DNA of 64,000 bases from Macrostomum lignano (GCA_002269645.1 NIVC01000237.1:372001-436000); one strand, 5' to 3'; shown: positions 12,629 to 64,000, numbered from the stretch's first letter. Translations and numbers: made by a program. The notes: generated by a model not told the origin, from the letters alone.

Positions 12629-15600
12629 CAGTCGGCCCATTATTTTTTCGTCGCTCTCCTTCTTGGGCTTGCATTGCGAGCTGCCCCACCACTTGCTCAC
12701 CTTGATGCCGTAGTAATTCAGGTGCGAGTCGATGCAGGAGGCCATCTTGGTGAGGCACGGCAGGAACACCTTCGGCGAGTCCGCGCACTTGCGGTCTTCG
12801 TTCTTCGGCTTGCCTTGGCAAATTCGAAATCCGCTTGGAGAGTTCGGCTTCATGCCCGACGGGTAGAACACCTCCGTGCCGTGATGGTACGGACCCGACT
12901 TCTGGTCCGGCTGGCACCGCTCCAGGGGGCCCCGGCACAGCGGCAGGTGCACCACCGGGTCCTGTGGGGAAACAGTTGAGCTGAGCTGCCAATAACTGCA
13001 GTCACCCCTCACTCTACTGATCTCTCCCTGACTCTCCACGTCTCTCCGTGGGTCTATTTCTTGATTATTAAAATTCCTGCTGACTCTGACTTTTGACTTC
13101 CATCGTCTCCCTCTGACCCTTCGTGGACTCCTAATCCCTCATCCCTCAGCCCTCATCCCTCATCCCTCAGCCCTCATCCCTCAGCCCTCATCCCTCATCC
13201 CTCATCCCTCAGCCCTCATCCCTCAGCCCTCATCCCTCATCCCTCATCCCTCATCCCTCAGCCCTCATCCCTCAGCCCTCATCCCTCATCCCTCATCCCT
13301 CATCCATCAGCCCTCAGCCCTCAGCCGTCAGCTCTCATCCCTCATCCCTCATCCCTCATCCCTCAGCCCTCATCCCTCATCCCTCAGCCCTCATCCCTCA
13401 TCCCTCAGCCCTCATCCCTCAGCCCTCATCCCTCATCCCTCATCCCTCATCCCTCAGCCCTCATCCCTCAGCCCTCATCCCTCATCCCTCATCCATCATC
13501 CCTCATCCCTCAGCCCTCATCCTTCAGCCCTCATCCCTCATCCCTCATCCCTCAGCCCTCATCCCTCATCCCTCAGCCCTCATCCCTCATCCCTCATCCC
13601 TCATCCCTCAGCCCTCATCCCTCATCCCTCATCCCTCAGCCCTCATCCCTCATCCCTCAGCCCTCAGCCCTCATCCCTCATCCCTCATCCCTCAGCCCTC
13701 ATCCCTCATCCCTCAGCCCTCATCCCTCATCCCTCAGCCCTCATCCCTCATCCCTCAGCCCTCATCCCTCATCCCTCAGCCCTCATCCCTCAGCCCTCAT
13801 CCCTCAGCCCTCATCCCTCATCCCTCATCCCTCAGCCCTCATCCCTCAGCCCTCATCCCTCATCCCTCATCCCTCAGCCCTCACTCACCCGCCCGTTGAC
13901 CACCCGCCAGCTGCTGCCGCCGGCCATCAGTTTGTCGAACGCCGCCGAAAACGTCGCGTCGCCCACCCGGGGCTCCCCAAAGGTGAACAGCTGAGGCCGC
14001 AGCCCCTTGGCCGCCAGCTGGACTGCCGTCAGGGCCGCCATCGCCCCGCCAAGCGAGTGGCCCGTCACCAGAATCGCGTCTCTCGGATTCGCCGAACGAA
14101 TTTGGGCAAACGCCGGCTCCAGTTTAGACCAGACCGCCCGCTGAGCCATGCTGAAGTACGCCTGCACCCGGCCTCCGACAGGGGACGGCACCGGCGGCGT
14201 TTTGAGCACGCTGAGCAGCTCGACAATCAGCTGCCCGTCCTGGTTGGTGCCGCGGAAGACGATCTGGAGAAGGACGGTGGGGGATGCCAGTACAAGACAT
14301 GTTTTAGCCAGTACAAGACCCACAAACAGACTGGTACAAGACTCACACACAGACCAGTACAAGACCCAAACACAAAGCAGTACAAGACCCACACAAAGAC
14401 CAGTACAAGACCCACACAAAGACCAGTACAAGACCCACACATAAACCAGTACAAGACTCACACACAGACCAGTACAAGACTCACACACAGACCAGTACAA
14501 GACCCACACAAAGACCAGTACAAGACTCACACAAAGACCAGTACAATACTCACACATAAACCAGTACAAGACTCACACACAGACCAGTACAAGACTCACA
14601 CACAGACCAGTACAATACTCACACAAAGACCAGTACAAGACTCACACAAAGACCAGTACAAGACCCACACATAAACCAGTACAAGACTCACACACAGACC
14701 AGTACAAGACTCACAAACAGACCGGTACAAGACTCACACACAAACCAGTACAAGACTCACACACAGACCAGTACAAGACCCACACATAAACCAGTACAAG
14801 ACTCACACACAGACCAGTACAAGACTCACACACAGACCAGTACAAGACCCAAACACAAAGCAGTACAAGACCCACACAAAGACCAGTACAAGACCCACAC
14901 ACAGACCAGTACAAGACCCAAACACAGACCAGTACAAGACCCACACAAAGACCAGTACAAGACTCACACAAAGACCAGTACAAGACTCACACAAAGACCA
15001 GTACAAGACCCACACATAAACCAGTACAAGACTCACACACAGACCAGTACAAGACTCACACACAGACCAGTACAAGACTCACATATAAACCAGTACAAGA
15101 CTCACACACAGACCAGTACAAGACTCACACACAGACCAGTACAAGACTCACACACAGACCAGTACAATACTCACACACAGACCAGTACAAGACTCACACA
15201 CAGACCAGTACAAGACTCACACACAGACCAGTACAATACTCACACAAAGATCAGTACAAGACTCACACACAGACCAGTACAATACTCACACAAAGATCAG
15301 TACAAGCCTCATACTCAGACCAGTACAAGATTCATACTCAGACTAGTACAAGACCAACACACACAGTACAAGACCATACACACGCCAGTACAAGACCAAC
15401 ACACACAGTACAGGAACAACACACACACTACAGGATCAACACACACAAGTACAGGACCAACACACACCAGTACAAGACCCACACCAGTACAAGGCAGTAA
15501 AGAACAGTAAAGGTCATCTTTCTCCAGCATCCGCCGCTCCGAATACCATGGTGATGCGTTTTCTCGGCAGCCGGGCCACAAAGCCGGACCAGGTGCCGCC

Positions 15601-18498: not shown

Positions 18499-20287
18499 AT
18501 GGCTCCAAAAGGATTTCGGTGCACGGCAGAAATAACGATAGAGCTGGTTGTGTCCCCCGGTACTTGGCTGCCTCATAGGGACGACGTCTACCTCACAATT
18601 GACTTCTTAAATCAGGTTGGGAGTCAGCTGTTTTGTTTAAAAACTCGTTTCTGTTATAGGCAATATCGTGAAAGTATCTGTCCTACTGAAATGACATATC
18701 TCTTTACATACAAATATTATCGGGTTTGTTGATAAGGAGTGTGACATCAATGTTTTGACATTCGAATGAATATTCTTAAATTCTCATAGAGATACTGGCA
18801 TCTTCGTTTATGACACCCTGACATCATCAAAGACCATGAAATCTTCATAGAGACCATGACATCTTCATAGAGACCATGACATCTTCATTGAGATCCTGAC
18901 ATCCTCATAGAGACCATGAAATTTTCATAGAGATCATGACATCTTCATTGAGATCCTGACAGCCTCATAGAGACCATGAAATTTTCATAGAGATCATGAC
19001 ATCTTCATTGAGATCCTGAAATCCTCATAGAGATCCCAAAATCTCAAAGAGATCCTGACATTCTGATGCATGCAGAGATCTTGACACTCTTCAAAGTTTG
19101 ACCTCTTCGCAAGGAGACTGACATCCCTGAAAAAAACCCTGACATCCTTCTGAACCGACTGACCACCCGCACTGAAGCTGGAACTCAACCAATGAGCTCC
19201 CAAATTCCCTCCGCAGGTCAAGCGCTCCCGCCTAGTAGCGCCCGTCTTCCCACTTCGAGTCCACGAGCGGTTCCGCTTCGAGAAGAACTTCTGGCCAGCC
19301 TCCGACCCGCGCGACGTTGTGGACCGGCTGGAGGAGCTGCCCATCGCCATCGAGCTCCGTCAGGCCACCGACGCCTTCCGCGGCAGCCGCTTGCTCGCCT
19401 ACTTCGACTCGGACGGACGCGAGTTTCTGTTCCCCAGCGCCCCCACCTCCAAGCCCGCCTGCCACACCGGGCGGGAGGCCCTGATGGCCCGCACAGTCGA
19501 TTTCTCCGGCGTCAGCCCGAAGCTGGAGTTCTGCACTTACACCGTGGTTGAGGAGCTGCGCACCAGCTACTCTGGCAGCGTTGGCGATGACTTCGGCGGG
19601 GAGGTGACACGGCCGCGCCGCTCTGCCGCCGCCGCCATCGACAGCGTCGACCTTCGAGCACGTCGTCATGGCAAACGGCCGCCGTCGATGTCGAAGGTCG
19701 ACGACTCAGCGACCGCAGCAGCCGGCGAGGACCGCCGGGCCGGCTACCGCACCGACGACCGGCCGCCGTTCGTGGTGCGCCACGTGGCCGACGGGCTGAC
19801 TGGCAGGAAGCCAGTGCTGCACAACATTCGCACCCGGTTGCGGCCGCCGCGTCAGCTGATGGACCCGGAGGAGGAGGCGCTGGGCGAGGCCGCCTGGGGC
19901 TACCGGGGAGGCCGCAGCGGAGGAGGTGGCGGCGGCGGCGGCAGCGCGGACAGTTCTCCGACGCATCGGCGCCGAGCTGACTACGACTACGAGGACTACG
20001 GTCGACGCGGATCTCGGCGACGCCGGGCGTCGGCGTCGCGGCTTCGACGGAGCGACTCCAGCGGTGAGCTGTGGTACTACGAGCGGCCGTACGCGCCGTT
20101 CGCGCACGAGTACCCGGAGTGGGGCGAGGCCGAGTGCCTGGCGCCAGGCTCGGGCAGCTCCCTGATGGACTCGCGCTACAACCCGGTGCTGGCCAGCAGC
20201 CTGCGGCACCGGACCGCCGATCGATACGGCGAGGCGCCGGCTTACCGGTCGAGGCGGCCGCCGCTGAGAGACTCGCAGGTGTACTAA
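18499..20287 (+). CDS. SPATA6-family protein, ~395 aa, 2 exons
   Basis: Exons 18499-18615 and 19217-20287 (phase 0). MAPKGFRCTAEITIELVVSPGTWLPHRDDVYLTIDFLNQ|VKRSRLVAPVFPLRVHERFRFEKNF...DPRDVVDRLE...REFLFP...REALMART...GVSPKLEFCTYTVVEE and a later RPPFVVRH match the SPATA6 N-terminal domain as I remember it. A further 3' exon via CAG|GTGTAC cannot be excluded. Confidence 0.85.
18815..19090 (+). repeat. Degenerate ~20-bp intronic repeat (ACATCTTCATAGAGACCATG)
   Basis: Direct reading, SPATA6-like intron. Confidence 0.85.
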
Positions 20288-29387: not shown

Positions 29388-31283
29388 CTACTCATCCACA
29401 TGCCACCCGTTAGCCTCATCCAGAATCCGTTTGCCCCATTTCGGCTTGAGCAGCAGCAGCTGACGCAGCGAGAATTCTTTGCCAGCCAAGGCGTCGCGAG
29501 TTCGCGCCGCTTTGTAGGCTCTGCGAATCGAAGCCAGTACAGCCGGAGGCAGCGGCCTCTCTAGCTGCAGGCAGAGCCGACAGCGGCTTTGATCCGCTGG
29601 TGTCGGCATAGAGAAGCCGAGCGACTCGCGGGCCCGTTGGAAATCTTCAGTATAAAATCTGATCAGCAGACTGGCGTGCCTGGCGCAGTAGGCGACGATC
29701 TCAGGCAGCGGGTGCGGCAGTATCAGGCAGCGGTTTGGCCCGACGCTCAGGCGGATGCAGTCAGCGAACAGCTGCACCGACACCTCAGCGCCTGCAGCTG
29801 GCGAGATGGCCGATCCGGCCAGGCGGATGGCGACCACACTAATGGGCTGGCACAGCGTTTCGGAGGCCACAGAGGCCGCTCTGACGGCGGCGGCGGCAGT
29901 TGAACTGGCGTTGCTGGGGTCGCCAGGCGGGCTGTCGGAGCCGGGGCTGCTAGACATAGAAGCGGAGTCCTCAGCCAGGTCCTCGTCGCCGCTCTCGTCG
30001 CCGCTCTCATTCAAAAAGTCGATGTCAACTGCCGCCTCCGGGTCTTCATCGCTGTCAGCGAGACCGGGCTGCTGCGGCTCCTCTGCCTCGTCGCTGTCCT
30101 CGCTGTCCCGACGCTGTACGCTGGAGCTGATTCGCTCCGAGGCGCTGCGGCTCGCCTGGCGGGCGCTCGACCGGACGGACGGCGTGCAAACTGGCGCCGG
30201 CGCCGCTAAACTGCGACGCCCGACACTACGCCTGCCGCCGCGCCCGAGACCCCGACCGCCGCCGCGCCCAAAGCCAGGCGCAATGATGGCAGGCGGGGCC
30301 TTGGTGTCCTCAGTGGCCTCTTCATTGACCGGAGCAGCAGTTGAGGCCGGTTCCAGCGGCTCCGCTTTGACTGCACAGCTGGCCGGCTCCGTTTTCACTC
30401 GCCGGGCTGGCGGCTCCGCAGCTGATGGCGCTGCCGTGGTGAGGTCAACTTGGCACCGTTTTCGATCGCCGCTTGCACGGCCAGCCGCAGGCGGAGGCTC
30501 GCTAGCGTCGGTCTCGACATTCGGCGGTGTCGGAGGCTTCTGAGCGGGCTGCTGCTGAGGCGGCTGCTGAGCAGAGGCGCCAGCCGCATCTTGGCCGCCG
30601 AAACGCAGGTGCAGCTGCATTGTGCCCTGTGATAAAATGCGGAGCGAGTGACAGCGAGACAACTCGCTGGATTTTGGTGGCTAAGAGATTCCAAATCCTG
30701 CATTTATAACCATCAAGTTCATTAGTTTAAAAAATAATTGATTACACCTGGCCCCCATTGGGCCAGATGTGCAACCGACAGCTCAGCTTCAGCTATAACG
30801 ACTGTTTAGTCCAAGGACTGGGGGGGGGGGTCGACAAACACACCATAAATTCCCCAAGCTAAAGCTGGCACCCATTTTACAGCTGAGTGAACTGAAGCAA
30901 TGCAGAGTTCAGTGTCTTGCTCAAGAACACAAACTGTTCCAGTGGAATCGGACGCACTAACCACTAGGCTAAAACACTGTAAAGACAGTCTCCTACTGCA
31001 AAGACTCAATCAAGTAACCTTCATATGAATCCTATCTATGTATTACCAAAATGCCAAAACAGCCATACCCAATTGCATTCATTACCTGACCATTGTGAGC
31101 AGCCTGGCAGTGCTTCTGCACAATAAAAACTTTGTTTGTGAAGAGGCTGCAGATGCTGCACACAAATATTTGCGAGTTCGGTCCACTAGGCTGGCAGCAG
31201 CTGACACTGTGCGTCAGAAAAGCAGCAAGGTCTGTGTATGGCTCATCGCAAGCCTTACAAATAAGGTCTGCTATAGCAGGCAT
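29388..31283 (-). CDS. Zinc-finger (C2HC + C2H2) protein with an acidic linker and a C-terminal PH-like domain of SENP6/7 type, ~478 aa, 2 coding exons
   Basis: Exons 31283-31086 (MPAIADLICKACDEPYTDLAAFLTHSVSC...CSICSLFTNKVFIVQKHCQAAHNGQ) and 30626-29388, joined in phase 0 (CAG|GTAATG; TCACAG|GGC). GC-rich long open frame; the C-terminal domain call is by recalled similarity only. Confidence 0.7.
30747..30978 (-). mobile_element. tRNA-derived SINE with an internal deletion, in the zinc-finger gene intron
   Basis: The minus strand reads TAGCCTAGTGGTTAGTGCGTCC (Pol III A-box-like), then TGTGTTCTTGAGCAAGACACTGAACTC...CAGCTGTAAAATGGGGTGCC, a central motif typical of widespread invertebrate and fish tRNA SINEs. 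No intact B-box. Confidence 0.6.
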
Positions 31284-43276: not shown

Positions 43277-48853
<5,577 letters not shown>

Positions 48854-55390: not shown

Positions 55391-58300
55391 TCACTCGGCT
55401 TTCTCAGCCTCCCCCGCAGTCCAGTCCCTCAGGCACTGCCATTGCTGCCCCGGCCGCAGCAGCTGGCGCACATTGATATTAACCCGAGTCAGCCGCAGGT
55501 AGCGCCGCATCAGGCAGCACTGCTCAGTCTGTGAGCAGGCCGCAGCCCCACTTTCGGCATCGCTTCGATCCTCGTCGCAAAAGCAGCAGTAGTCGGGTCC
55601 GGCCGCACGGCCAGAAGTGCCGGTAAACACCCTGACCACAGAGTGGTAAAACTGCCTGGACTGGCCGGTCATCACGATCACGTCTCCGTGTCCGAGCAGC
55701 ACCGGGATTGGCGCCAGAGACTCCGGACAGAGCCGGTCGGGACCGGCCAGCAGGTAAGCGGCGGATAGGCCGACGCTCAGGCTGACCAGGGGAGCCGCCA
55801 TGTAGGGCTCGGCGGTGTCCAGGTGGAAGCACATGCTGTGGCCGGGGTGGTAGTAGTTCACAATGCCCGCCTGGGCTGCGTACCGCCGCCCTGTCCAGGC
55901 ACCTGGGGGATTCGTATAAGCGAGATTGACTACTGAAGAGTAGCAAGGAGAGAATTTGAAGCGAATGGGAGCCGGCAATTCACTGCAAGCCATTTGGGTT
56001 TGGGGCTTAGGTAAGGGTTTAGATTAGGATTTAGGTTAGGGTTTAGGCTGCGGTTTAGGTTAGGGCTAGGTTTAAGTTAGGGTTTAGGTTAGGGTCGGCA
56101 GTCAATAGTGCAGACCCTAAGCGAATTTCTTACGTCTACAACGCGTGCAATACAATTAGTACTTGCTATTTGGGGGGGGGTACTGGCTACATGTATGGGA
56201 TTCTTTCTATCCAGGGATTCTTGCTATCTGCAGGATGCTTGCTATCTGGCTGGATGCTTGCTATCTGGCTGGATGCTTCAACAATATCTGGGGGATGCTT
56301 GCTATCTGCAGATGCTTGCTATCTGCAGATGCTTGCTATCTGGGGTGATGCTTGCTATCTGCAGATGCTTGCTATCTGGGGTGATGCTTGCTATCTGCAG
56401 ATGCTTGCTATCTGGGGAGATGCTTGCTATCTGCAGATGCTTGCTGTCTGGGGTGATGCTTGCTATCTGCAGATGCTTGCTGTCTGGGGTGATGCTTGCT
56501 ATCTGCAGATGCTTGCTATCTGCGGTTGCTTACTTTTGGGGGGGGGGGGTTGCTTGCTATCTGGGGGGATGCTTGCTATCTGCGGTTGCTTACTTTTGGG
56601 GGAGGGGGGGTTGCTTGCTATCTGGGGGATGCTTGCTGTCTTGGGAATATTTTTCAATTAAGAGGGAGCTATATTTTGTTGTCTGTTAATTTTAGAGAAA
56701 AAGTGATTCATAGCAAAACACCTTTGTCCGTAACAATTTTACACGAATCAGGTGATTTTTAGAAGTGAAGAAGGAATTGGTTCTTAAGAAAATGTGCAGT
56801 TTTAATTGTTTTCCATGAACTACTTTTGCTCCTTGCTTATTGGGCGCCCCGAAGGGGGGCGGCACTAGATTGCTAGTTAGCATACTAATACTTAAACAGA
56901 ACTTCAACAGTATCCATGTACACAGATGAGATCCTTGCTCAGGCTCAGAAATGAGTAAGAAGTACAAACAACTCAGAAACCGGACCAGAGTTCGTAGCTC
57001 ATTTCTAGAAACGCATCTATAAGCCCACAGAAATTATTCGCAGGGATTCCAGACTAGGAAAGCAAATTATTTGAAAATCCTAGTGGCTTTTCAAGTACGT
57101 AGTTTATTGGGAATTTACCAATTAAGAATTGACTTGCAGGTAAAGAGTCGTTGCAGGTAAAATAGGAAAGAAGTGACTCAATTATACGATTCTAAAACGA
57201 GATGTCTTTTAGTCTACTTGAGATAGTAGAAAGTTAAGCGCCAATACGACTCTTGGATGATGACTTTTTTGCTACTCTTTTACGATTCTGCAACTCACGT
57301 GATGCGCTCGTGACTCAGCAGTCGCCTCAGAGTCGCTAGAGATTCTCCAGTGAGTTGTTTGCAACTTGACTCTTTAGCGATTCTTGTCAGGGTAACGTAC
57401 TCTCTCAATGGGGTACTTGAAAATCAATTAGGATTTCCCAATTAGAATCCACCCAGAAGTCAATTGGGATTTCCCAATTAGAATCGAACCAGAAATCAAT
57501 TGGGATTTCCCAATTAATTAGAATCCACCCGAAAATCAATTGGGATTTCCCAATTAGAATCCACCCGAAAATCAATTGGGATTTCCCAATTAGAATCCAC
57601 CCAGAAATCAATTGGGATTTCCCAATTAGAATCCACCCAGAAATCAATTGGGATTTCCCAATTAGAATCGAACCAGAAATCAATTGGGATTTCCCAATTA
57701 GAATCGAACCAGAAATCAATTGGGATTTCCCAATTAGAATCGAACCAGAAATCAATTGGGATTTCCCAGTAGAATCGACCCGTAAATCAATTGGGATTTC
57801 CCAGTAGAATCGACCCGAAAATCAATTGGGATTTCTCGATTAGAATCGACCCGAAAATCAATTGGGATTTCCCAATTAGAATCGAACCAGAAATCAATTG
57901 AAATTTCCCAATTAGAATCGACCCGAAAATCAATTGTGATTCCCCAGTAGAATCGACCCAGAAATCAGTTGGGATTTCCCAATAGAGTCGCTCACCAGTG
58001 AGGTCGCAGAGCTGAGCTGCCAGGTCAGCCAGACAGCCGGGAATCTGCGGGGGCTCCCAGCTGGCGTCGGCAGCCGGCGGCACTCTGTATCGCCTCGCCG
58101 TCCAGTTGTACTGCGCACCCAGCGTTGTCCAGCGCAGCTTGTACAACCAGCTGGAGGCGAACAGCCGATCGTCTGGTTCGTCAACAAATTTGATTGCGTC
58201 ATCGAATAGCAGGGCCGGCCTGTCAGGCTCGATGTCCAAGTTGGTCCGGCGCCGCTCGCAGTCCAAGTCGTCGTCGACGGCACCGGCGTCGGCTGGACGA

Positions 58301-58882
58301 CCCCGGCCGGGCCAGCGGCGAACAGCGTCCGCGGCCAGGTGGGTTGGAAGGTCGGCGGCGCCCGGACGGGCCGGCGGCAGAAACGGATTGGGCAGGCAGT
58401 AGAAACCGTTGGGGTACTGCAGCACCTGCGGATGCGGGAGCAGAGGGAGAGCGGCTTTGCTCTCTTCTTTTAGGGGAATATAAGAAACACGACGATTTCC
58501 AAACAGGTTTTGAGATTTCAGTCTACTTTTTGACGAATATTTTCAAGACTGGGAAAGAAAAAATGTTATTCATTATTTTTATAAACTTCTCGGGTTTGTC
58601 GATTTAAAATTTAGCAGGCTTTATTAAAAAATAAATTAAAAAATGCAACGCGCTACTTATAGTAAGTTAAACAACAAAAATCTCTCCAACCTCAATAGAT
58701 TCCTTCAGCGAAGCGTCAGACGACTGCGGCCGCCGCACCTGGAACCTGACGGCCTTGGTGGCGGCCGCCCGTTCTGCGCAGTCCCGAAACTGCGCGTAGT
58801 TCATCGCGCGGTAACGCTTGAAGGCCAACTTCAAAGGGTCGCCACCAGCATCGTTACACTGACCAGCCTCCTCCATCATCAT
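55391..58882 (-). CDS. ALKBH1: AlkB homolog 1 (Fe/2-oxoglutarate nucleic-acid dioxygenase), ~377 aa, 3 exons
   Basis: Exons 58882-58691, 58425-57996, 55902-55391 with matched phases: GDPLKLAFKRYR|VLQYPNGFYCLPNPFLP...KLRWTTLGAQYNWTARRY...|AQAGIVNYY...CFHLD (HxD)...PLVSLSVG..AAYLLAG...GDVIVMTGQSRQFYHSV (His)...RVNINVRQ. Confidence 0.93.
55990..56096 (+). repeat. Degenerate TTAGGG / TTTAGG telomere-like tract
   Basis: TTAGGTAAGGGTTTAGATTAGGATTTAGGTTAGGGTTTAGG...GTTAGGGTTTAGGTTAGGG in ALKBH1 intron 2. Confidence 0.7.
56210..56640 (+). repeat. GATGCTTGCTATCTG-based intronic repeat
   Basis: Direct reading. Confidence 0.9.
57420..57985 (+). repeat. 36-bp intronic minisatellite with a palindromic core AATTGGGATTTCCCAATT
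   Basis: Unit GAAATCAATTGGGATTTCCCAATTAGAATCGAACCA, ~16 copies in ALKBH1 intron 2. Confidence 0.95.
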
Positions 58883-58892
58883 CACGATGATG

Positions 58893-59858
58893 TCAGGCTC
58901 GCCACAGGTGAACCAGCTCTCTGCGGTAGAAGTCTCCCACCGAGTCCTTGTCTTCAATGAGGTCGCGCAGGCCCGCTGCTACAGGCGGGTCGCTGGTTAG
59001 CAACCGGTTGCCAAGGCAACAAGTCAGCGAGTCCAAATCGTTGCTAAGCAACCGCTCCAGAGAATCGAAGCCCAAGCACACTTGTACGGGATTTTCCCAG
59101 ACTGCACCGGTTGTCAACCCAACCACCTGGTTGCTAGGCAAACTTGAAATCAGTCGACGCGCCGGTTCAAACAGCTGGCGCTCGAACTCGCGACCTAGCT
59201 CGGTCAGACGCAGCAGAATCCGATTGCAGGCCAGCAGGCGTTCGAAGAACTCGCGCTCGAGTTCGAGCTCCGTTCGCTCGACCAGCTGGACTTCTTCGGC
59301 AACAGCGGGCTCGGACGGCGAGGCTGCAGCGGCCCGAAGGCGAAGCCAACGGCGATTGACGCGATTGAGTCGGCGACACTCGGCGACGAGCTGGGCGCGG
59401 GACTGGCCGTAGCGCTGGGCGAGACTGCGGAGGGGCTGACGGGCTTCGCGAAAGAAATCCCGGACCGACTGCTGGGGATGGCGGGAGGGGATCTCTGCTG
59501 CCCTGGATGCTGTGTCTGAGATCTATCTACTGCCCTGGATGCTGTGCCTGAGATCTAGCTACTGCCCTGGATGCTGTGTCTGAGATCTATCTACTGCCCT
59601 GGATGCTGTGCCTGAGATCTAGCTACTGCCCTGGATGCTGTGTCTGAGATCTATCTACTGCCCTGGATGCTGTGTCTGAGATCTAGCTGCTGCCCTGGAT
59701 GCTGTGTCTGAGATCTAGCTACTGCCCTGGATGCTTTTCACAGCTTTCAAGTGCTCTAGACGCTCTGATTAGTATCCACCAAAAAAGATTGAATCCAAAG
59801 CCAAAAACCCATGTACAGTACTTACGAACAGTATTACTATGCTACTTATAAGTAGCAT
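58893..59858 (-). CDS. Gene X: unidentified helical / coiled-coil protein (~200 aa), mostly missed by the ORF track
   Basis: Stop-free GC-rich frame 59471-58893 behind the acceptor CCCGCCATCCCCAG: QSVRDFFREARQPLRSLAQRYGQSRAQLVAECRRLNRV...ELELEREFFERLLACNRILLRLTELGREFERQLFEPARRL...GDFYRRELVHLWRA*. It contains no ATG; the best start exon is 59858-59826 (MLLISSIVILF|GTAAGT, phase 0), which is tentative. Confidence 0.7.
59487..59735 (+). repeat. 32-bp intronic repeat (GATCTATCTACTGCCCTGGATGCTGTGTCTGA)
   Basis: Period 32 (59521, 59553...), immediately 5' of the gene X acceptor. Confidence 0.93.
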
Positions 59859-60295
59859 ACAAACGCACTTACATTTCATTATATTTAGCAGGAAATTACA
59901 AAAAAACTAATTAGTCACGCAGCAGTGAGCAACACAACGGTAAGATAATAAGAAAACAAAGGTCAGTTCCGCTATACAAATGCTTGGCTTCAATTTGTGT
60001 ATGCACATTATAGCAATGAGGAACCACATCGACATGTTCGGAGAAACGTCATTTCTAGGAATTTTTAAGGCTGGCATTTCAAACCTTTTGATGAGAACAA
60101 TAAAAAAGCGTTTAATCGGCCTTCAATATTCTTAGCATTCTTATACCATATAGATATTATTATAGATTTTCCTAGAAATGAAAAATATACCACTTGAGTA
60201 CTTTAAGTAGCCATTGCTGGACACAATCAATAACTATAGACAAATAATTGAATCATCATAAACCATTGGGATCAGTGCAACTATATCACCGCAAT

Positions 60296-61242
60296 TCAGT
60301 TTGTAGTCGATGGCGGATACTGATGATGATGGTAGCCCGCGCCGCTGCCGCCCGCCCCACCGCCGCTGGCGCCAGGCGGTCGGTACTGAGGCGCCGCGAA
60401 CGGCGTCATGCCTTTGCCAGCAATGCCGCAGGTGCCGACGCCAACGCGGCCCTTCGGGTTGTCCGGCCCGGGCGTGGCGAAGATGCTCTTGCCGATGCGG
60501 CCCTGGGCATTCGGCGGGCGGGCGAGGTGTGGCTTGAGACTATGGAGAGTCAGGGAAACAGGGAGAGTCAGGGAAACAGGGAGAGTCAGGGAAACAGGGA
60601 GAGTCGAGAAAACAGGGAGAGTCAGGGAAACAGGGAGAGTCAGGGAAACAGGGAGAGTCAGGGAAACAGGGAGAGTCGAGAAAACAGGGAGAGTCAAGGA
60701 CAGAGGGCGACCCGCGACAGTCAGGGTCAGATGGGAGAGTCAGAGGAGAGAGTCAGGGTCAGAGGGGAGAGTCAGAGAAAGGGGGGAGAGTCAGGGACTG
60801 AGGGAGAGTCAGGGACTGAGGGAGAGTCATGGACTGAGGGAGAGTCAGGGACTGAGGGAGAGTCAGGGTCAGAGGGGAGAGTCAAGGATACAGAGGGAGT
60901 CAGGGACAGGGGGGGAGAGTCAAGGACAGAGAGGGAGAGTCATGCAGAGCAGCCGAGCGGAAGCGACAGCGGCCAACTCACCTGTTTCTGAATCTTCTTA
61001 GAGAAGCTCTGCCAGGACTTTTTCTCCCGCTCGACAACGGCCTCCATCTCTTTCTCCCTCTCGGCCCGCTTGGCAACTTTGCGCATCTTGGCCTCCAGCG
61101 CCTTCGTCCGCTCCTCTCGGCGTCGCTTCTTAGCCGCCTGCGCGTTGCTGCCCTGCGCTGTGAGGGAGGCGGCGCCGGACTCGGAGCCGTGCGCGTCCGC
61201 TCCCGACTTGGCTCCGTCTGCGAGCGGCTTCAACAGGCTGAC
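60296..61242 (-). CDS. SMNDC1: SMNDC1 / SPF30 splicing factor, last two exons (Tudor exons lie beyond the window end)
   Basis: Exons 61242-60982 and 60502-60296: VSLLKPLADG...KMRKVAKRAEREKEMEAVVEREKKSWQSFSKKIQKQ|GRIGKSIFATPGPDNPKGRVGVGTCGIAGKGMT matches the SPF30 C-terminal SIFxxP...GxVGVGTCGIA..PMT motif. Confidence 0.92.
60545..60935 (+). repeat. ~18-bp intronic repeat (GGGAGAGTCAGGGAAACA / GGGAGAGTCAGGGACTGA)
   Basis: Direct reading, SMNDC1 last intron. Confidence 0.9.
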
Positions 61243-61269
61243 CTGAGGGTTGGGGAGAGTCAGCAGTCA

Positions 61270-64000
61270 GCAGGTCACTAATTGAGAGTCGACAGTCACT
61301 GCAGGTGGCTAATTGAGGTGCAGTCACTGCAGGTGGCTAATTGAGGCGACAGTCACATCAGGTGACTAATTGAGGTGCAGTCACTGCAGATGGCTAATTG
61401 AGGTGCAGTCACTGCAGGTGGCTAATTGAGGTGACAGTCACATCAGGTGACTAATTGAGGTGACAGTCACATCAGGTGACTAATTGAGGTGACAGTCACA
61501 TCAGGTGGCTAATTGAGGTGACAGTCACATCAGGTGACTAATTGAGGTGACAGTCACATCAGGTGACTAATTGAGGTGACAGTCACATCAGGTGGCTAAT
61601 TGAGGTGACAGTCACATCAGGTGACTAATTGAGGTGACAGTCACATCAGGTGACTAATTGAGGTGACAGTCACATCAGGTGGCTAATTGAGGTGACAGTC
61701 ACATCAGGTGACTAATTGAGGTGACAGTCACATCAGGTGACTAATTGAGGTGACAGTCACATCAGGTGACTAATTGAGGTGACAGTCACATCAGGTGACT
61801 AATTGAGGTGACAGTCACATCAGGTGGCTAATTGAGGTGACAGTCACATCAGGTGACTAATTGAGGTGACAGTCACATCAGGTGACTAATTGAGGTGACA
61901 GTCACATCAGGTGACTAATTGAGGTGACAGTCACATCAGGTGACTAATTGAGGTGACAGTCACATCAGGTGACTAATTGAGGTGACAGTCACATCAGGTG
62001 GCTAATTGAGGTGACAGTCACATCAGGTGGCTAATTGAGGTGACAGTCACATCAGGTGGCTAATTGAGGTGACAGTCACATCAGGTGGCTAATTGAGGTG
62101 ACAGTCACATCAGGTGGCTAATTGAGGTGAAAGTCACATCAGGTGGCTAATTGAGGTGACAGTCACATCAGGTGGCTAATTGAGGTGGCAGTCACTGCAG
62201 GTCACTAATTGAGAGGCGACAGTCACATCAGGTGGCTAATTGAGGTGACAGTCACATCAGGTGGCTAATTGAGGTGGCAGTCACTGCAGGTCACTAATTG
62301 AGAGGCGACAGTCACATCAGGTGGCTAATTGAGGTGCAGTCACTGCAGGTGGCTAATTGAGGTGCAGTCACTGCAGGTGGCTAATTGAGGCGACAGTCAC
62401 ATCAGGTGGCTAATTGAGGTGACAGTCACATCAGGTGGCTAATTGAGGTGCAGTCACTGCAGGTGGCTAATTGAGGCGACAGTCACATCAGGTGGCTAAT
62501 TGAGGTGCAGTCACTGCAGGTGGCTAATTGAGGCGACAGTCACATCAGGTGGCTAATTGAGGTGCAGTCACTGCAGGTGGCTAATTGAGGCGACAGTCAC
62601 ATCAGGTGACTAATTGAGGCGACAGTCACATCAGGTGACTAATTGAGGTGACAGTCACATCAGGTGACTAATTGAGGCGACAGTCACATCAGGTGGCTAA
62701 TTGAGGTGACAGTCACATCAGGTGGCTAATTGAGGTGACAGTCACATCAGGTGGCTAATTGAGGTGCAGTCACTGCAGGTGGCTAATTGAGGCGACAGTC
62801 ACATCAGGTGGCTAATTGAGGTGCAGTCACTGCAGGTGGCTAATTGAGGCGACAGTCACATCAGGTGGCTAATTGAGGTGGCAGTCACTGCAGGTCACTA
62901 ATTGAGAGGCGACAGTCACATCAGGTGGCTAATTGAGGTGCAGTCACTGCAGGTGACTAATTGAGGTGACAGTCACATCAGGTGGCTAATTGAGGTGACA
63001 GTCACATCAGGTGGCTAAATGAGGTGACAGTCACATCAGGTGGCTAATTGAGGTGACAGTCACATCAGGTGGCTAATTGAGGTGAGTCACATCAGGTGGC
63101 TAATTGAGGTGACAGTCACATCAGGTGGCTAATTGAGGTGACAGTCACTGCAGGTGGCTAATTGAGGTGACAGTCACATCAGGTGGCTAATTGAGGTGAC
63201 AGTCACATCAGGTGGCTAATTGAGGTGACAGTCACATCAGGTGGCTAATTGAGGTGACAGTCACATCAGGTGGCTAATTGAGGTGACAGTCACATCAGGT
63301 GGCTAATTGAGGTGACAGTCACATCAGGTGGCTAATTGAGTTAATGGTCACATCAGGTGACCAATAAGGGGCAGAGGTGATGGTCACACCAGGTGACCAA
63401 TAAAGGACAGAGGTGATGGTCACATCAGGTGACCAATAAGGGGCAGAGGTGATGGTCACACCAGGTGACCAATAAAGGACAGAGGTGATGGTCACATCAG
63501 GTGACTAATAAGGGGCAGAGGTGATGGTCACACCAGGTGACCAATAAAGGACAGAGGTGATTATCACACCAGGTGACCAATAAAGAGCAGAGATGATGGT
63601 CACAGCAGGTGACCAATAAAGGACAGAGGTGATTATCACACCAGGTGACCAATAAAGAGCAGAGATGATGGTCACAGCAGGTGACCAATAAAGGACAGAG
63701 GTGATGGTCACATCAGGTGACCAATAAGGGGCAGAGGTGATGGTCACACCAGATGACCAATAAAGGACAGAGGTGATTATCACACCAGGTGACCAATAAA
63801 GAGCAGAGATGATGGTCACACCAGGTGACCAATAAAGGACAGAGGTGATTATCACACCAGGTGATCAATAAAGAGCAGAGATGATGGTCACAGCAGGTGA
63901 CCAATAAAGGACAGAGGTGATTATCACACCAGGTGACCAATAAAGGACAGAGGTGATTATCACACCAGGTGACCAATAAAGAGCAGAGATGATGGTCACA
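61270..64000 (+). repeat. Compound intronic minisatellite: 29-bp units (AGGTGGCTAATTGAGGTGACAGTCACATC) switching at ~63345 to related 36-bp units (AGGTGACCAATAAAGGACAGAGGTGATGGTCACACC)
   Basis: Direct reading, SMNDC1 intron, running to the window end. Confidence 0.96.

What the first reader, a model, noticed from the sequence alone, without database searches (positions are those of the whole stretch)
58600..60502. Same-strand SMNDC1 - gene X - ALKBH1 cluster with only 10 nt between gene X's stop and the ALKBH1 ATG
Seen (minus strand): ...TGG CGA GCC TGA catcatcgtg ATG ATG ATG GAG. No room exists for a promoter, poly(A) site or acceptor between the two ORFs. A candidate acceptor (TTCTACCGCAG, 58921) lies inside gene X's last codons, 39 nt before the ALKBH1 ATG, and an AATAAA (58625-58620) lies in ALKBH1 intron 1. 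SMNDC1 ends ~440 nt upstream of gene X's candidate start. Inference: a polycistronic unit whose two products are mutually exclusive: either polyadenylate in ALKBH1 intron 1 (gene X mRNA, with ALKBH1 exon 1 as 3' UTR) or trans-splice inside gene X (ALKBH1 mRNA), reminiscent of C. elegans SL1-type operons. Alternatives: a true bicistronic mRNA with reinitiation, or an X-ALKBH1 fusion by frameshift, since the ALKBH1 frame stays open for more than 70 nt upstream. All recognisable members act on RNA.
Basis: partly seen in the sequence, partly recalled or inferred. Interest (0 to 1): 0.72.

Follow-up and report, generated by a model that had tools for sequence, protein, structure and literature searches.

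The report
Hidden ORF abutting flatworm ALKBH1 start
In the flatworm Macrostomum lignano, an unannotated ATG-less reading frame that looks protein-coding ends 10 bases before the ALKBH1 start codon, inside an operon that is already annotated; it probably borrows its start codon from the trans-spliced leader and may share one mRNA with ALKBH1.

Summary
On the minus strand a 192-codon frame ("X", 59471..58896) stops at TGA 58895-58893, and 10 nt later ALKBH1 starts at 58882.

The window is Macrostomum lignano. The published annotation already places SMNDC1 (Mlig034475g1) and ALKBH1 (Mlig034475g2) in one transcriptional unit, so the operon is known. X is not annotated.

X looks coding when compared with a roughly 6%-diverged paralogous locus:
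- There are no indels and no stops.
- 16 of 26 substitutions fall at third codon positions.
- dN/dS is 0.31, the same as ALKBH1.
- Its codon usage is the best of the six frames.

X has no detectable homologue. It contains no ATG in any frame for 589 nt. The M. lignano spliced leader ends in ATG, and a C-rich acceptor at 59472|59471 would join that ATG in frame.

My best reading (about 0.4) is one trans-spliced bicistronic mRNA. X would start at the leader AUG, and ALKBH1 would be reached by leaky scanning through the AUG-free X.

The intronic AATAAA is missing in the paralogues, the proposed acceptor is poor, and ALKBH1 is numbered g2, not g3.

A frameshift fusion is very unlikely. No RNA data could be reached, so the mechanism is inferred, not shown.

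The parts
60982..61242 (-). SMNDC1 (SPF30-like) penultimate coding exon. The 5' exons lie beyond the window end, behind long tandem-repeat introns.
   Evidence: Exon mapping of P0018 (BOX15_Mlig034475g1, 268 aa) onto L001 and the window. Translation checked.
60296..60502 (-). SMNDC1 last coding exon, with stop TGA at 60298-60296.
   Evidence: Pfam SMN_Tudor on the full protein.
59736..60295 (-). AT-rich spacer: the SMNDC1 3' UTR plus intercistronic sequence. It is 91% identical to the paralogue, with 7 gap events. It holds 15 ATGs, poly(A)-like hexamers at 60116 (ATTAAA, not conserved) and 59885 (AATATA), and two conserved GTAAGT donor-like sites at 59872-59867 and 59825-59820.
59498..59735 (-). 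32-bp tandem repeat, 7.4 copies (longer in the paralogues). It is typical of introns and outrons in this genome and contains no ATG.
59469..59494 (-). Candidate trans-splice (or cis) acceptor for X: the C-rich tract AGATCCCCTCCCGCCATCCCCAG|CAG|. With the exon starting at 59471 or 59468, the 3'-terminal ATG of the spliced leader is in frame with X.
   Evidence: Sequence. SL fusion computed. The SL sequence comes from PMC8629364. The old chimeric model P0013 used the same acceptor.
58893..59471 (-). ORF X: 192 sense codons plus TGA (58895-58893). It has no ATG in any frame, is not annotated, and has no detectable homologue. It is predicted to begin with a helical hairpin.
58883..58892 (-). 10-nt spacer CATCATCGTG between the X stop and the ALKBH1 ATG. 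It is 13 nt in the paralogues, where ATG 1 is GTG.
58919..58931 (-). An exon start at 58920 makes the SL-AUG open a 13-codon uORF that ends in UGA overlapping the ALKBH1 AUG (UGAUG). An exon start at 58918 gives an in-frame 12-residue N-terminal extension of ALKBH1.
   Evidence: The tract has only 7 of 15 pyrimidines and does not match [T/C]TNCAG.
58691..58882 (-). ALKBH1 exon 1 (64 codons, MMMEEAGQ...ESIE).
58426..58690 (-). ALKBH1 intron 1 (265 nt), with AATAAA at 58625-58620. That hexamer is absent from intron 1 of both paralogues.
57996..58425 (-). ALKBH1 exon 2.
55391..55902 (-). ALKBH1 exon 3, with stop TGA at 55393-55391. It holds the 2OG-Fe(II) oxygenase core.

Best explanation
The window is a Macrostomum lignano operon that is already annotated: SMNDC1 = Mlig034475.g1 and ALKBH1 = Mlig034475.g2.

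Between the two genes lies an unannotated, lineage-restricted protein-coding ORF, X, of 192 codons. X has no start codon of its own.

The proposed mechanism has three steps.
1. The polycistronic precursor is trans-spliced at the C-rich acceptor ...CCATCCCCAG|CAG (exon start 59471).
2. The 35-nt spliced leader ends in AUG. It therefore supplies the initiator codon in frame and gives a 193-aa protein, MQSVRDFF...HLWRA.
3. The same mature mRNA continues through the 10-nt spacer into ALKBH1. The leader AUG sits in a weak context (U at -3, C at +4), and no other AUG exists in any frame for the next 589 nt. Ribosomes that skip the leader AUG would therefore scan straight to the ALKBH1 AUG (G at -3).

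One trans-spliced bicistronic mRNA would thus make both proteins by leaky scanning.

- **Shown:** the sequence anatomy, the species and gene identities, the published g1/g2 unit, the coding-type conservation of X, the AUG-free stretch, and the in-frame geometry with the leader.
- **Inferred:** that trans-splicing happens at 59472|59471, that X is translated, and that X and ALKBH1 sit on one mature mRNA.
For: **Species and operon**
- ALKBH1 is 100% identical to BOX15_Mlig034475g2, and SMNDC1 is BOX15_Mlig034475g1. Paralogue L003 repeats the g1/g2 pairing.
- PMC5730564 says transcriptional units are precursor RNAs. They are cut into genes only at experimentally mapped SL and poly(A) sites.
- Consecutive numbers leave no separate gene for X, which fits X lying inside the g2 mRNA.

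**X is coding**
- Against paralogue L002, the 576 nt show 26 substitutions, no indel and no stop. The substitutions fall 4/6/16 across codon positions (binomial P=0.003).
- There are 14 synonymous changes against 7.4 expected (randomisation P=0.005).
- dN/dS is 0.31 with dS 0.096. Full-length ALKBH1 gives dN/dS 0.317. The flanking spacer shows 9.3% mismatches and 7 gap events.
- The other two sense frames give dN/dS of 1.85 and 1.99.
- Codon-usage log-odds is +0.096 bits per codon, the best of the six frames. It equals the cross-validated true frames of ALKBH1 (+0.09) and SMNDC1 (+0.14).
- GC by codon position is 0.71/0.46/0.69.
- AlphaFold from the single sequence gives a helical hairpin over residues 2-109 with pLDDT of about 80.

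**Start codon**
- No ATG exists in any frame from 59811 down to 58883.
- The SL, CGGTCTCTTACTGCGAAGACTCAATTTATTGCATG, ends in ATG.
- Joining it at 59471 gives a 193-aa ORF, and the only AUG before the ALKBH1 AUG is the leader's own.
- Use of the flatworm leader AUG as an initiator is established for Schistosoma (Cheng et al. 2006, as cited in PMC9851317).
- In L002, the codon just before CAG TCG is a genomic ATG (CCCATGCAG against CCCCAGCAG). It encodes MQSARDFF, colinear with the leader-initiated product predicted for the window.
- In-frame TAG stops 7 codons upstream in L002 and L003 rule out a longer conserved N-terminus.

**AUG desert**
- X has 0 ATG in 589 nt, against 8-11 per kb in the neighbouring coding sequences (Markov-1 P=0.012).
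- A codon-aware estimate gives P of about 0.037 for no Met, times 0.07-0.22 for no out-of-frame ATG.

**No 3'-end signal for a separate X mRNA**
- There is no AATAAA or ATTAAA between 59471 and 58691.
Against: - No transcript, SL-read, 3'-end, ribosome-profiling or peptide data could be reached. The protein collection holds no M. lignano RNA-derived entries for this locus.
- The selection test rests on a single deep comparison, because L002 and L003 are 99.6% identical.
- L003 carries a 1-bp deletion in X. This could be a real disabling mutation or a homopolymer assembly error.
- The antisense frame whose wobble positions coincide with X has an equally low dN/dS (0.29). Direction therefore rests on stops (4 in that frame) and on codon usage (-0.34).
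- X has no homologue among 5.8 billion clustered or 1.84 billion representative proteins, and no Pfam family.
- The acceptor CCCCAG does not match the enriched [T/C]TNCAG motif, although only 44% of mapped sites do.
- Two conserved GTAAGT sites upstream could splice to this acceptor in cis instead.
- The ATG-free stretch is a post hoc observation at about the 1% level.
- The gene-numbering argument is indirect.
Confidence: 0.4

Rival explanations
1. X and ALKBH1 are mutually exclusive products of one precursor. Either the RNA is polyadenylated in ALKBH1 intron 1 (an X mRNA with ALKBH1 exon 1 as its 3' UTR), or the leader is trans-spliced inside the last codons of X at 58921 (a monocistronic ALKBH1 mRNA). 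This would resemble operons that lack intercistronic DNA.
For: - A CAG acceptor with some upstream pyrimidines lies 38 nt before the ATG. It sits in a 60-nt block that is identical in the paralogues.
- With the leader joined there, its AUG opens a 13-codon uORF that ends in UGAUG on the ALKBH1 start. Joined 2 nt later, it is in frame with ALKBH1.
- True internal SL acceptors inside coding regions are documented in flatworms (PMC12582326).
- Mutually exclusive processing in operons without intercistronic DNA is discussed for Ciona and for C. elegans SL1-type operons (PMC1488885).
- AATAAA is present at 58625.
Against: - The AATAAA is absent from intron 1 of both paralogues, which have no AATAAA or ATTAAA there at all.
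- The acceptor tract has only 7 of 15 pyrimidines and does not match [T/C]TNCAG.
- The model gives no reason for X to lack out-of-frame ATGs.
- Two SL sites should have produced three numbered genes, but ALKBH1 is g2.
- The conserved 60-nt block is also simply coding sequence of X.
Confidence: 0.15
2. X is not translated. The GC-rich block 59471..58883 is only a long AUG-free 5' UTR, or an outron, of ALKBH1. The open frame and its substitution pattern are chance or reflect constraint at the RNA level.
For: - X is not annotated in any of three copies.
- It has no homologue and no Pfam family.
- It has no ATG. An AUG-free leader is what a functional long 5' UTR needs.
- L003 has a 1-bp deletion in X.
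- Only one independent paralogue comparison exists.
Against: - The frame is open for 209 codons in L001 and 199 in L002, with P of about 0.014 for such a frame.
- The synonymous excess has P=0.005 and the third-position excess P=0.003.
- dN/dS equals that of ALKBH1.
- Codon usage is the best of six frames and matches real genes.
- There are no indels over 576 nt, while the adjacent spacer has 7 gap events in 537 nt.
Confidence: 0.2
3. X is coding but starts at a genome-encoded ATG in a short upstream exon that is cis-spliced onto the X acceptor. An example is ATG 59858 ... TTC|GTAAGT (donor 59825) joined to 59471, giving MLLISSIVILF-QSVRDFF..., 203 aa. This would come from read-through RNA or from a promoter of its own in the AT-rich spacer. 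It is the reader's candidate start.
For: - Two GTAAGT sites are conserved in all three copies.
- Eight in-frame ATG/donor/acceptor combinations exist in the window copy.
- Acceptors shared between cis- and trans-splicing are common in flatworms.
- In L002, ALKBH1 is g1 of a unit separate from SMNDC1.
Against: - In L002, the diverged copy with an intact X, no ATG/donor/acceptor combination stays in frame. An 8-bp indel lies in the mini-exon.
- The mini-exon peptide would not be conserved.
- The upstream exon would add AUGs ahead of ALKBH1.
Confidence: 0.1
4. ALKBH1 is translated from a bicistronic mRNA by termination-reinitiation at the UGA-10 nt-AUG junction, not by leaky scanning.
For: - The stop and start are 10-13 nt apart in all copies.
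- A UGGGA pentamer lies 40 nt upstream of the stop, at 58939-58935. This is the core of the calicivirus reinitiation motif (own knowledge).
Against: - The UGGGA is lost in both paralogues, where the sequence is GGTGGAGGAC.
- Reinitiation after a 193-codon ORF is inefficient without a dedicated element (established knowledge).
- The model does not explain why X lacks out-of-frame AUGs.
Confidence: 0.05
5. X and ALKBH1 are one protein. The frames would be joined by programmed frameshifting, or the separation would be an assembly indel.
For: - The ALKBH1 frame is open 32 codons upstream of its ATG.
- An old database protein (P0013, 709 aa) fuses the SMNDC1 C-terminus, X and ALKBH1.
Against: - The same stop and the same +1 offset occur in three separately assembled copies.
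- P0013 needs an impossible 7-nt 'intron' (GTGGGAG). It also carries several other frame jumps inside SMNDC1 and ALKBH1, so it is a chimeric model of the kind described for flatworm operons.
- By my recollection of the human sequence (no alignment was run), the conserved N-terminal ALKBH1 motif, DPLKLAFKRYR here, begins about 14 residues after the ATG.
Confidence: 0.03

Closest known systems
SL-resolved operons of Macrostomum lignano (Wudarski et al. 2017, PMC5730564; Ustyantsev & Berezikov 2021, PMC8629364)
   Same: - Same species, same strand, and one published transcriptional unit (Mlig034475 g1/g2).
- A single 35-nt leader.
- The repeat-adjusted distance from the SMNDC1 stop to the X acceptor is 824 - 238 = 586 nt, below the 1-kb operon threshold.
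- Tandem repeats inflate the spacer, as those authors describe.
   Different: - The published annotation has two cistrons, while the sequence suggests a third.
- The third ORF has no room for its own 3'-end signal or for an outron before ALKBH1. The usual intercistronic distance has its mode at about 100 bp.
Flatworm ORFs initiated by the spliced-leader AUG ('slORFs'; Cheng et al. 2006 in Schistosoma mansoni; PMC9851317)
   Same: - The leader ends in AUG.
- The ORF lacks an AUG of its own.
- The acceptor puts the leader AUG in frame.
   Different: - Nothing is shown experimentally here.
- This is a free-living macrostomid rather than a schistosome.
- The ORF is followed immediately by a second conserved cistron.
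Operons without intercistronic DNA: Ciona (Satou et al. 2006, PMC1488885) and C. elegans SL1-type operons
   Same: - There is essentially no spacer between cistrons.
- Possible competition between upstream 3'-end formation and downstream trans-splicing is discussed in that paper.
   Different: - In those operons the upstream poly(A) site abuts the acceptor AG.
- Here no poly(A) signal precedes the junction.
- The only candidate acceptor lies inside the upstream coding sequence.
- The AUG-free upstream cistron points to translation of both ORFs from one mRNA rather than to resolution into two.
Cellular bicistronic mRNAs read by leaky scanning (for example MOCS2A/MOCS2B, and Drosophila dicistronic genes such as stoned and Adh/Adhr; own knowledge)
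   Same: - Two conserved ORFs would share one mRNA.
- The first AUG is in a weak context.
- No intervening AUGs occur before the second start.
   Different: - Here the first AUG would be donated in trans by the leader.
- The upstream ORF is long (193 codons) and does not overlap the second.
- Nothing has been verified.
Chimeric gene models from flatworm operons (Calvelo et al., PMC12582326)
   Same: The database protein P0013 (709 aa) fuses SMNDC1, X and ALKBH1. This is exactly the artefact those authors describe for polycistronic precursors.
   Different: The chimera here also captures an ORF that the later, better annotation dropped.

Membership tests
SL-resolved operon (M. lignano definition) | Adjacent genes lie on the same strand and are assembled into one transcriptional unit from RNA-seq. 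| tested here: met
   SMNDC1 is Mlig034475g1 and ALKBH1 is Mlig034475g2. Paralogue L003 has Mlig032427g1/g2. In L002 the unit is split. The definition is quoted.
SL-resolved operon (M. lignano definition) | The repeat-adjusted intergenic distance is below 1 kb. | tested here: met
   From the SMNDC1 stop at 60296 to the X acceptor at 59472 is 824 nt. Subtracting the 238-nt tandem repeat leaves 586 nt.
SL-resolved operon (M. lignano definition) | The downstream gene carries the spliced leader, shown by SL reads at its 5' end. | not testable with these tools
   No RNA-seq or browser tracks were reachable, and the gene identifiers were not found in the held supplements.
Leader-AUG-initiated ORF (slORF) | The species' leader ends in AUG. 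| tested here: met
   The SL sequence ...TTGCATG is given in PMC8629364.
Leader-AUG-initiated ORF (slORF) | The ORF lacks its own AUG, and a plausible acceptor places the leader AUG in frame. | tested here: met
   X contains 0 ATG. Acceptors at 59472|59471 and 59469|59468 give in-frame ORFs of 193 and 192 aa.
Leader-AUG-initiated ORF (slORF) | Trans-splicing at that acceptor and translation from the leader AUG have been observed. | not testable with these tools
   This needs SL reads, ribosome profiling or proteomics.
Leaky-scanning bicistronic mRNA | No AUG occurs in any frame between the first and second start codons. | tested here: met
   In the modelled SL-X-ALKBH1 mRNA, the only AUG before position 625 is the leader's own. 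The same holds in all three copies, apart from L002's start-position ATG.
Leaky-scanning bicistronic mRNA | The first AUG is in a weak context and the second is adequate. | tested here: met
   By sequence, the leader AUG has U at -3 and C at +4, while the ALKBH1 AUG has G at -3. Context rules for flatworms are assumed from the general Kozak rule.
Leaky-scanning bicistronic mRNA | Both ORFs are present on one mature, polyadenylated mRNA. | not testable with these tools
   The only support is indirect: the g1/g2 numbering and the absence of AATAAA or ATTAAA between 59471 and 58691.
Operon lacking intercistronic DNA (Ciona / C. elegans SL1-type) | The upstream gene's poly(A) site directly abuts the downstream trans-splice acceptor. 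| tested here: not met
   No canonical poly(A) signal lies upstream of the junction. The only AATAAA is 257 nt downstream of the ALKBH1 ATG, in intron 1, and it is absent in the paralogues. The actual 3' ends were not observable.
Calicivirus-type termination-reinitiation (TURBS) | A conserved UGGGA motif lies upstream of the stop/start junction. | tested here: not met
   It is present at 58939-58935 in the window only and is changed in L002 and L003.
ALKBH1 (AlkB homologue 1) | A 2OG-Fe(II) oxygenase AlkB-like domain, with ALKBH1 proteins as the closest named relatives. | tested here: met
   Pfam PF13532 at E=6e-23. The best named hits are insect and nematode ALKBH1 at 29-36% identity.
SMNDC1 / SPF30 | An SMN-type Tudor domain. 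| tested here: met
   PF06003 at E=1e-6 and 29.2 bits, against a cut-off of 22.7. Orthology to SMNDC1 rather than SMN was not separately tested. I recognise the C-terminal GRIGKSIF...GVGTCG motif as SPF30-like from memory.

The most novel reading that the evidence does not exclude
A flatworm makes two unrelated proteins from one trans-spliced mRNA. The spliced leader donates the only AUG for a young, lineage-specific 193-aa protein. The conserved nucleic-acid dioxygenase ALKBH1 is translated from the same mRNA, because the whole upstream cistron has been kept free of AUGs. The leader AUG would then act as a built-in switch that sets the X:ALKBH1 ratio.
Probability: 0.3. Interest if true: 0.6.

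Novelty: new member of a known kind. Interest (0 to 1): 0.36.

Why it matters
The operon itself is routine. About 15% of M. lignano genes are in operons, and this one is already annotated.

What may be worth keeping:
1. **A probable missing gene.** Standard ORF callers cannot see it, because its start codon is added in trans. This hints that ATG-less, leader-initiated ORFs are systematically missing from macrostomid annotations.
2. **A compact natural test case.** Every flatworm trans-spliced mRNA carries a 5' AUG. This locus could show whether ribosomes routinely skip that AUG, and whether two cistrons can be served from one mRNA in this way.

M. lignano has working transgenesis, so the locus could be tested directly with dual-frame reporters.

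Tried and rejected
- **Homology for X.** The word-indexed search found nothing. Exhaustive HMMER against 1.84 billion representatives gave one spurious hit to a repetitive bacterial adhesin-like protein, E=1.7e-4. Pfam found nothing. Foldseek against the PDB returned only generic antiparallel coiled-coil hairpins with E of 0.2 or worse.
- **An antisense gene instead of X.** The wobble-coincident plus-strand frame has dN/dS 0.29. I rejected it because of 4 stops and codon-usage log-odds of -0.34.
- **Upstream ATG exons for X.** They work in the window copy, but not in the paralogue with an intact X.
- **The TURBS-like UGGGA.** It is not conserved.
- **Extra constraint on the 3' third of X**, as might be expected around an internal acceptor. 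There are 5 substitutions in 192 nt against 21 in 384 nt, Fisher P=0.14, which is not significant.
- **Published identifiers.** Mlig034475, Mlig032427, Mlig027507 and Mlig019470 do not appear in any main text or held supplement.
- **Transcript evidence.** A scan of metagenome contigs for the 5' end of X found nothing.
- **RNA families and SL gene.** Rfam found no RNA family in the window, and there is no SL RNA gene copy in the window.
- **The bacterial promoter/terminator scan** is irrelevant for this eukaryote.

Full report
**1. What the window is**

The region has GC-rich exons separated by introns packed with tandem repeats.

I built an ALKBH1 model from the minus strand: exons 58882..58691, 58425..57996 and 55902..55391. 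It translates to 377 aa. That protein is 100% identical over its full length to NCBI PAA87324.1, BOX15_Mlig034475g2 of the flatworm Macrostomum lignano. It carries the AlkB-type 2OG-Fe(II) oxygenase domain.

The genomic record NIVC01000237.1 contains the window sequence exactly.

Upstream on the same strand are the last two exons of an SMN-Tudor protein: 61242..60982 and 60502..60296. This is BOX15_Mlig034475g1.

M. lignano trans-splices a single 35-nt leader, CGGTCTCTTACTGCGAAGACTCAATTTATTGCATG, onto about 30% of its genes. About 15% of its genes are in operons (PMC8629364).

**2. The observation**

It is correct to the base. The X frame stops at TGA 58895-58893. The 10 nt CATCATCGTG follow, and then ATG at 58882.

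Two further assembled copies of the locus, L002 and L003, keep the same stop and the same frame offset. Their spacer is 13 nt because the first of the three ATGs is GTG there.

This rules out an assembly indel and makes a fusion protein very unlikely.

An old database protein of 709 aa (P0013) does fuse the SMNDC1 C-terminus, X and ALKBH1. It does so only through a 7-nt "intron" and several other frame jumps. That is the chimeric-model artefact known from flatworm operons (PMC12582326).

**3. The polycistronic unit is already known**

In the published annotation, "transcriptional units" are RNA-seq-assembled precursors. They are cut into numbered genes only where SL reads or poly(A) reads give experimental boundaries (PMC5730564).

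| Copy | SMNDC1 | ALKBH1 |
|---|---|---|
| Window (L001) | Mlig034475 g1 | Mlig034475 g2 |
| L003 | Mlig032427 g1 (last-exon fragment) | Mlig032427 g2 |
| L002 | Mlig019470 g1 | Mlig027507 g1 |

Because the numbers are consecutive, X was never delimited as a gene of its own.

**4. Is X a gene?**

X is not annotated. It has no Pfam family and no homologue in two very large protein searches. Even so, it behaves like coding sequence.

*Comparison with L002*
- There are 26 substitutions in 576 nt, no indel and no stop.
- The substitutions fall 4/6/16 over codon positions (P=0.003).
- There are 14 synonymous changes against 7.4 expected (P=0.005).
- dN/dS is 0.31 with dS 0.096.

*Yardsticks from the same pair of loci*
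- Full-length ALKBH1 has dN/dS 0.317 and dS 0.074.
- The AT-rich spacer next door differs at 9.3% of sites and has 7 gap events.
- The other two sense frames give dN/dS of about 1.9.

*The antisense caveat*
- The antisense frame whose wobble positions coincide with X scores as well (0.29).
- It has four stops, however, and its codon-usage log-odds is -0.34 bits per codon.
- X scores +0.096. That is the best of the six frames and equal to the cross-validated true frames of the two flanking genes.

*Other indications*
- An open frame of this length has P of about 0.014.
- AlphaFold from the single sequence predicts a confident N-terminal helical hairpin and an unconfident C-terminal third.
- No informative structural neighbour was found.

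*Weaknesses*
- L002 and L003 are 99.6% identical, so only one deep comparison exists.
- L003 has a 1-bp deletion in a G run inside X.

I put the probability that X is translated at roughly 0.75.

**5. Where X starts**

X has no ATG. No ATG occurs in any frame on this strand from 59811 to 58883.

A strongly C-rich tract ends in CCCCAG|CAG| at 59472|59471. Joining the leader there puts its terminal ATG in frame and gives MQSVRDFF..., 193 aa. The next CAG works too.

The flatworm leader AUG is an established initiator in Schistosoma (Cheng et al. 2006, as cited in PMC9851317).

Two details fit this start:
- In L002 and L003, an in-frame TAG lies seven codons upstream. No longer N-terminus is therefore conserved.
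- In L002, the two bases before CAG TCG have changed so that a genomic ATG occupies exactly the codon the leader would supply. The product is MQSARDFF.

Upstream ATG mini-exons ending at two conserved GTAAGT sites can be spliced in frame in the window copy. None stays in frame in L002.

**6. How ALKBH1 is reached**

There is no room for an outron and no poly(A) signal between X and ALKBH1.

- It needs polyadenylation at the AATAAA in ALKBH1 intron 1. That hexamer is absent from both paralogues.
- It also needs trans-splicing at CGCAG|58920, whose upstream tract is pyrimidine-poor.
- It remains possible. With the leader joined there, the leader AUG opens a 13-codon uORF that ends in UGAUG on the ALKBH1 start. 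Joined two bases later, it is in frame with ALKBH1.

*What the sequence suggests instead*
- In an SL-X-ALKBH1 mRNA, the only AUG ahead of the ALKBH1 AUG is the leader's own, 589 nt upstream.
- Neighbouring coding sequences carry 8-11 ATG per kb. The absence has P of about 0.01 by a Markov model, and about 0.003-0.008 when split into "no Met" and "no out-of-frame ATG".
- The leader AUG has U at -3 and C at +4.
- Most flatworm trans-spliced mRNAs use a downstream start, so the leader AUG must often be bypassed. This is an inference from the 28% in-frame figure quoted.

A single bicistronic mRNA read by leaky scanning therefore explains five things together:
- the missing ATG of X;
- the AUG-free stretch;
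- the missing 3'-end signal;
- the 10-nt spacer;
- the g1/g2 numbering.

Termination-reinitiation is a weaker alternative. The only TURBS-like UGGGA is not conserved.

**7. Limits**

I could reach no RNA-level data. The identifiers are not in any held paper or supplement. The protein collections hold no RNA-derived M. lignano entries for this locus. A contig scan found nothing.

Every statement about trans-splice sites, 3' ends and translation is therefore an inference.

**8. Verdict**

- The operon reading is correct but already published.
- The specific either/or mechanism is poorly supported.
- The frameshift fusion is rejected.
- The residual interest is a probable unannotated ORF that depends on the leader AUG and abuts ALKBH1, and the possibility that the two share one mRNA.
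- Public browser tracks for this species could settle the question quickly.

Noticed in passing
L002 (NIVC01001350.1), about 595 nt upstream of the ALKBH1 ATG; aligns to window 59474-59473: One paralogue reads CCCATGCAG where the window and L003 read CCCCAGCAG. This creates a genomic ATG exactly at the codon where the spliced-leader ATG would sit, and it removes the first of the two tandem CAG acceptors.
   Followed up: partly
L003 (NIVC01001719.1); aligns to window about 59335: A 1-bp deletion (GGG to GG) lies inside the X frame of one near-identical paralogue. It is either a disabling mutation in a redundant copy or a homopolymer assembly error.
   Followed up: no
window 59872-59867 and 59825-59820 (minus strand): Two perfect GTAAGT donor-like sites lie 47 nt apart in the AT-rich spacer. 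Both are conserved in all three copies. They could define a small cis-spliced leader exon that competes with trans-splicing at the X acceptor.
   Followed up: partly
window 56003-56093 (ALKBH1 intron 2): A degenerate TTAGGG/CCCTAA-like array sits inside an intron. It resembles an interstitial telomere repeat.
   Followed up: no
window 61264-64000, 60544-60942, 57421-57990, 56215-56645: Introns of SMNDC1 and ALKBH1 consist almost entirely of tandem arrays with 18- to 58-bp units. One 29/58-bp array has 72 copies over 2.1 kb. Their lengths differ strongly between paralogues: the ALKBH1 gene is 3.5 kb in the window copy and 2.2 kb in L002.
   Followed up: partly
protein P0013 (MetaClust UPI0007A16994, 709 aa): An older database protein fuses the SMNDC1 C-terminus, X and ALKBH1 through a 7-nt pseudo-intron and several other frame jumps. 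It is a chimeric model of the operon. It is hidden inside the 90% cluster of ALKBH1, which is why searches with X found nothing.
   Followed up: yes
window 13874-14569 (-), 19319-20287 (+), 43655-44701 (-): Other coding exons in the window include a class-3 lipase (Pfam Lipase_3, E=3e-25), a SPATA6-like protein (E=6e-13) and a C2H2 zinc-finger protein. A 424-aa ORF at 29388-30662 (-) has no Pfam match.
   Followed up: partly
window 58939-58935 (minus strand): A UGGGA pentamer, the core of the calicivirus reinitiation motif, lies 40 nt before the X stop. It is present only in the window copy, so it is probably chance.
   Followed up: yes
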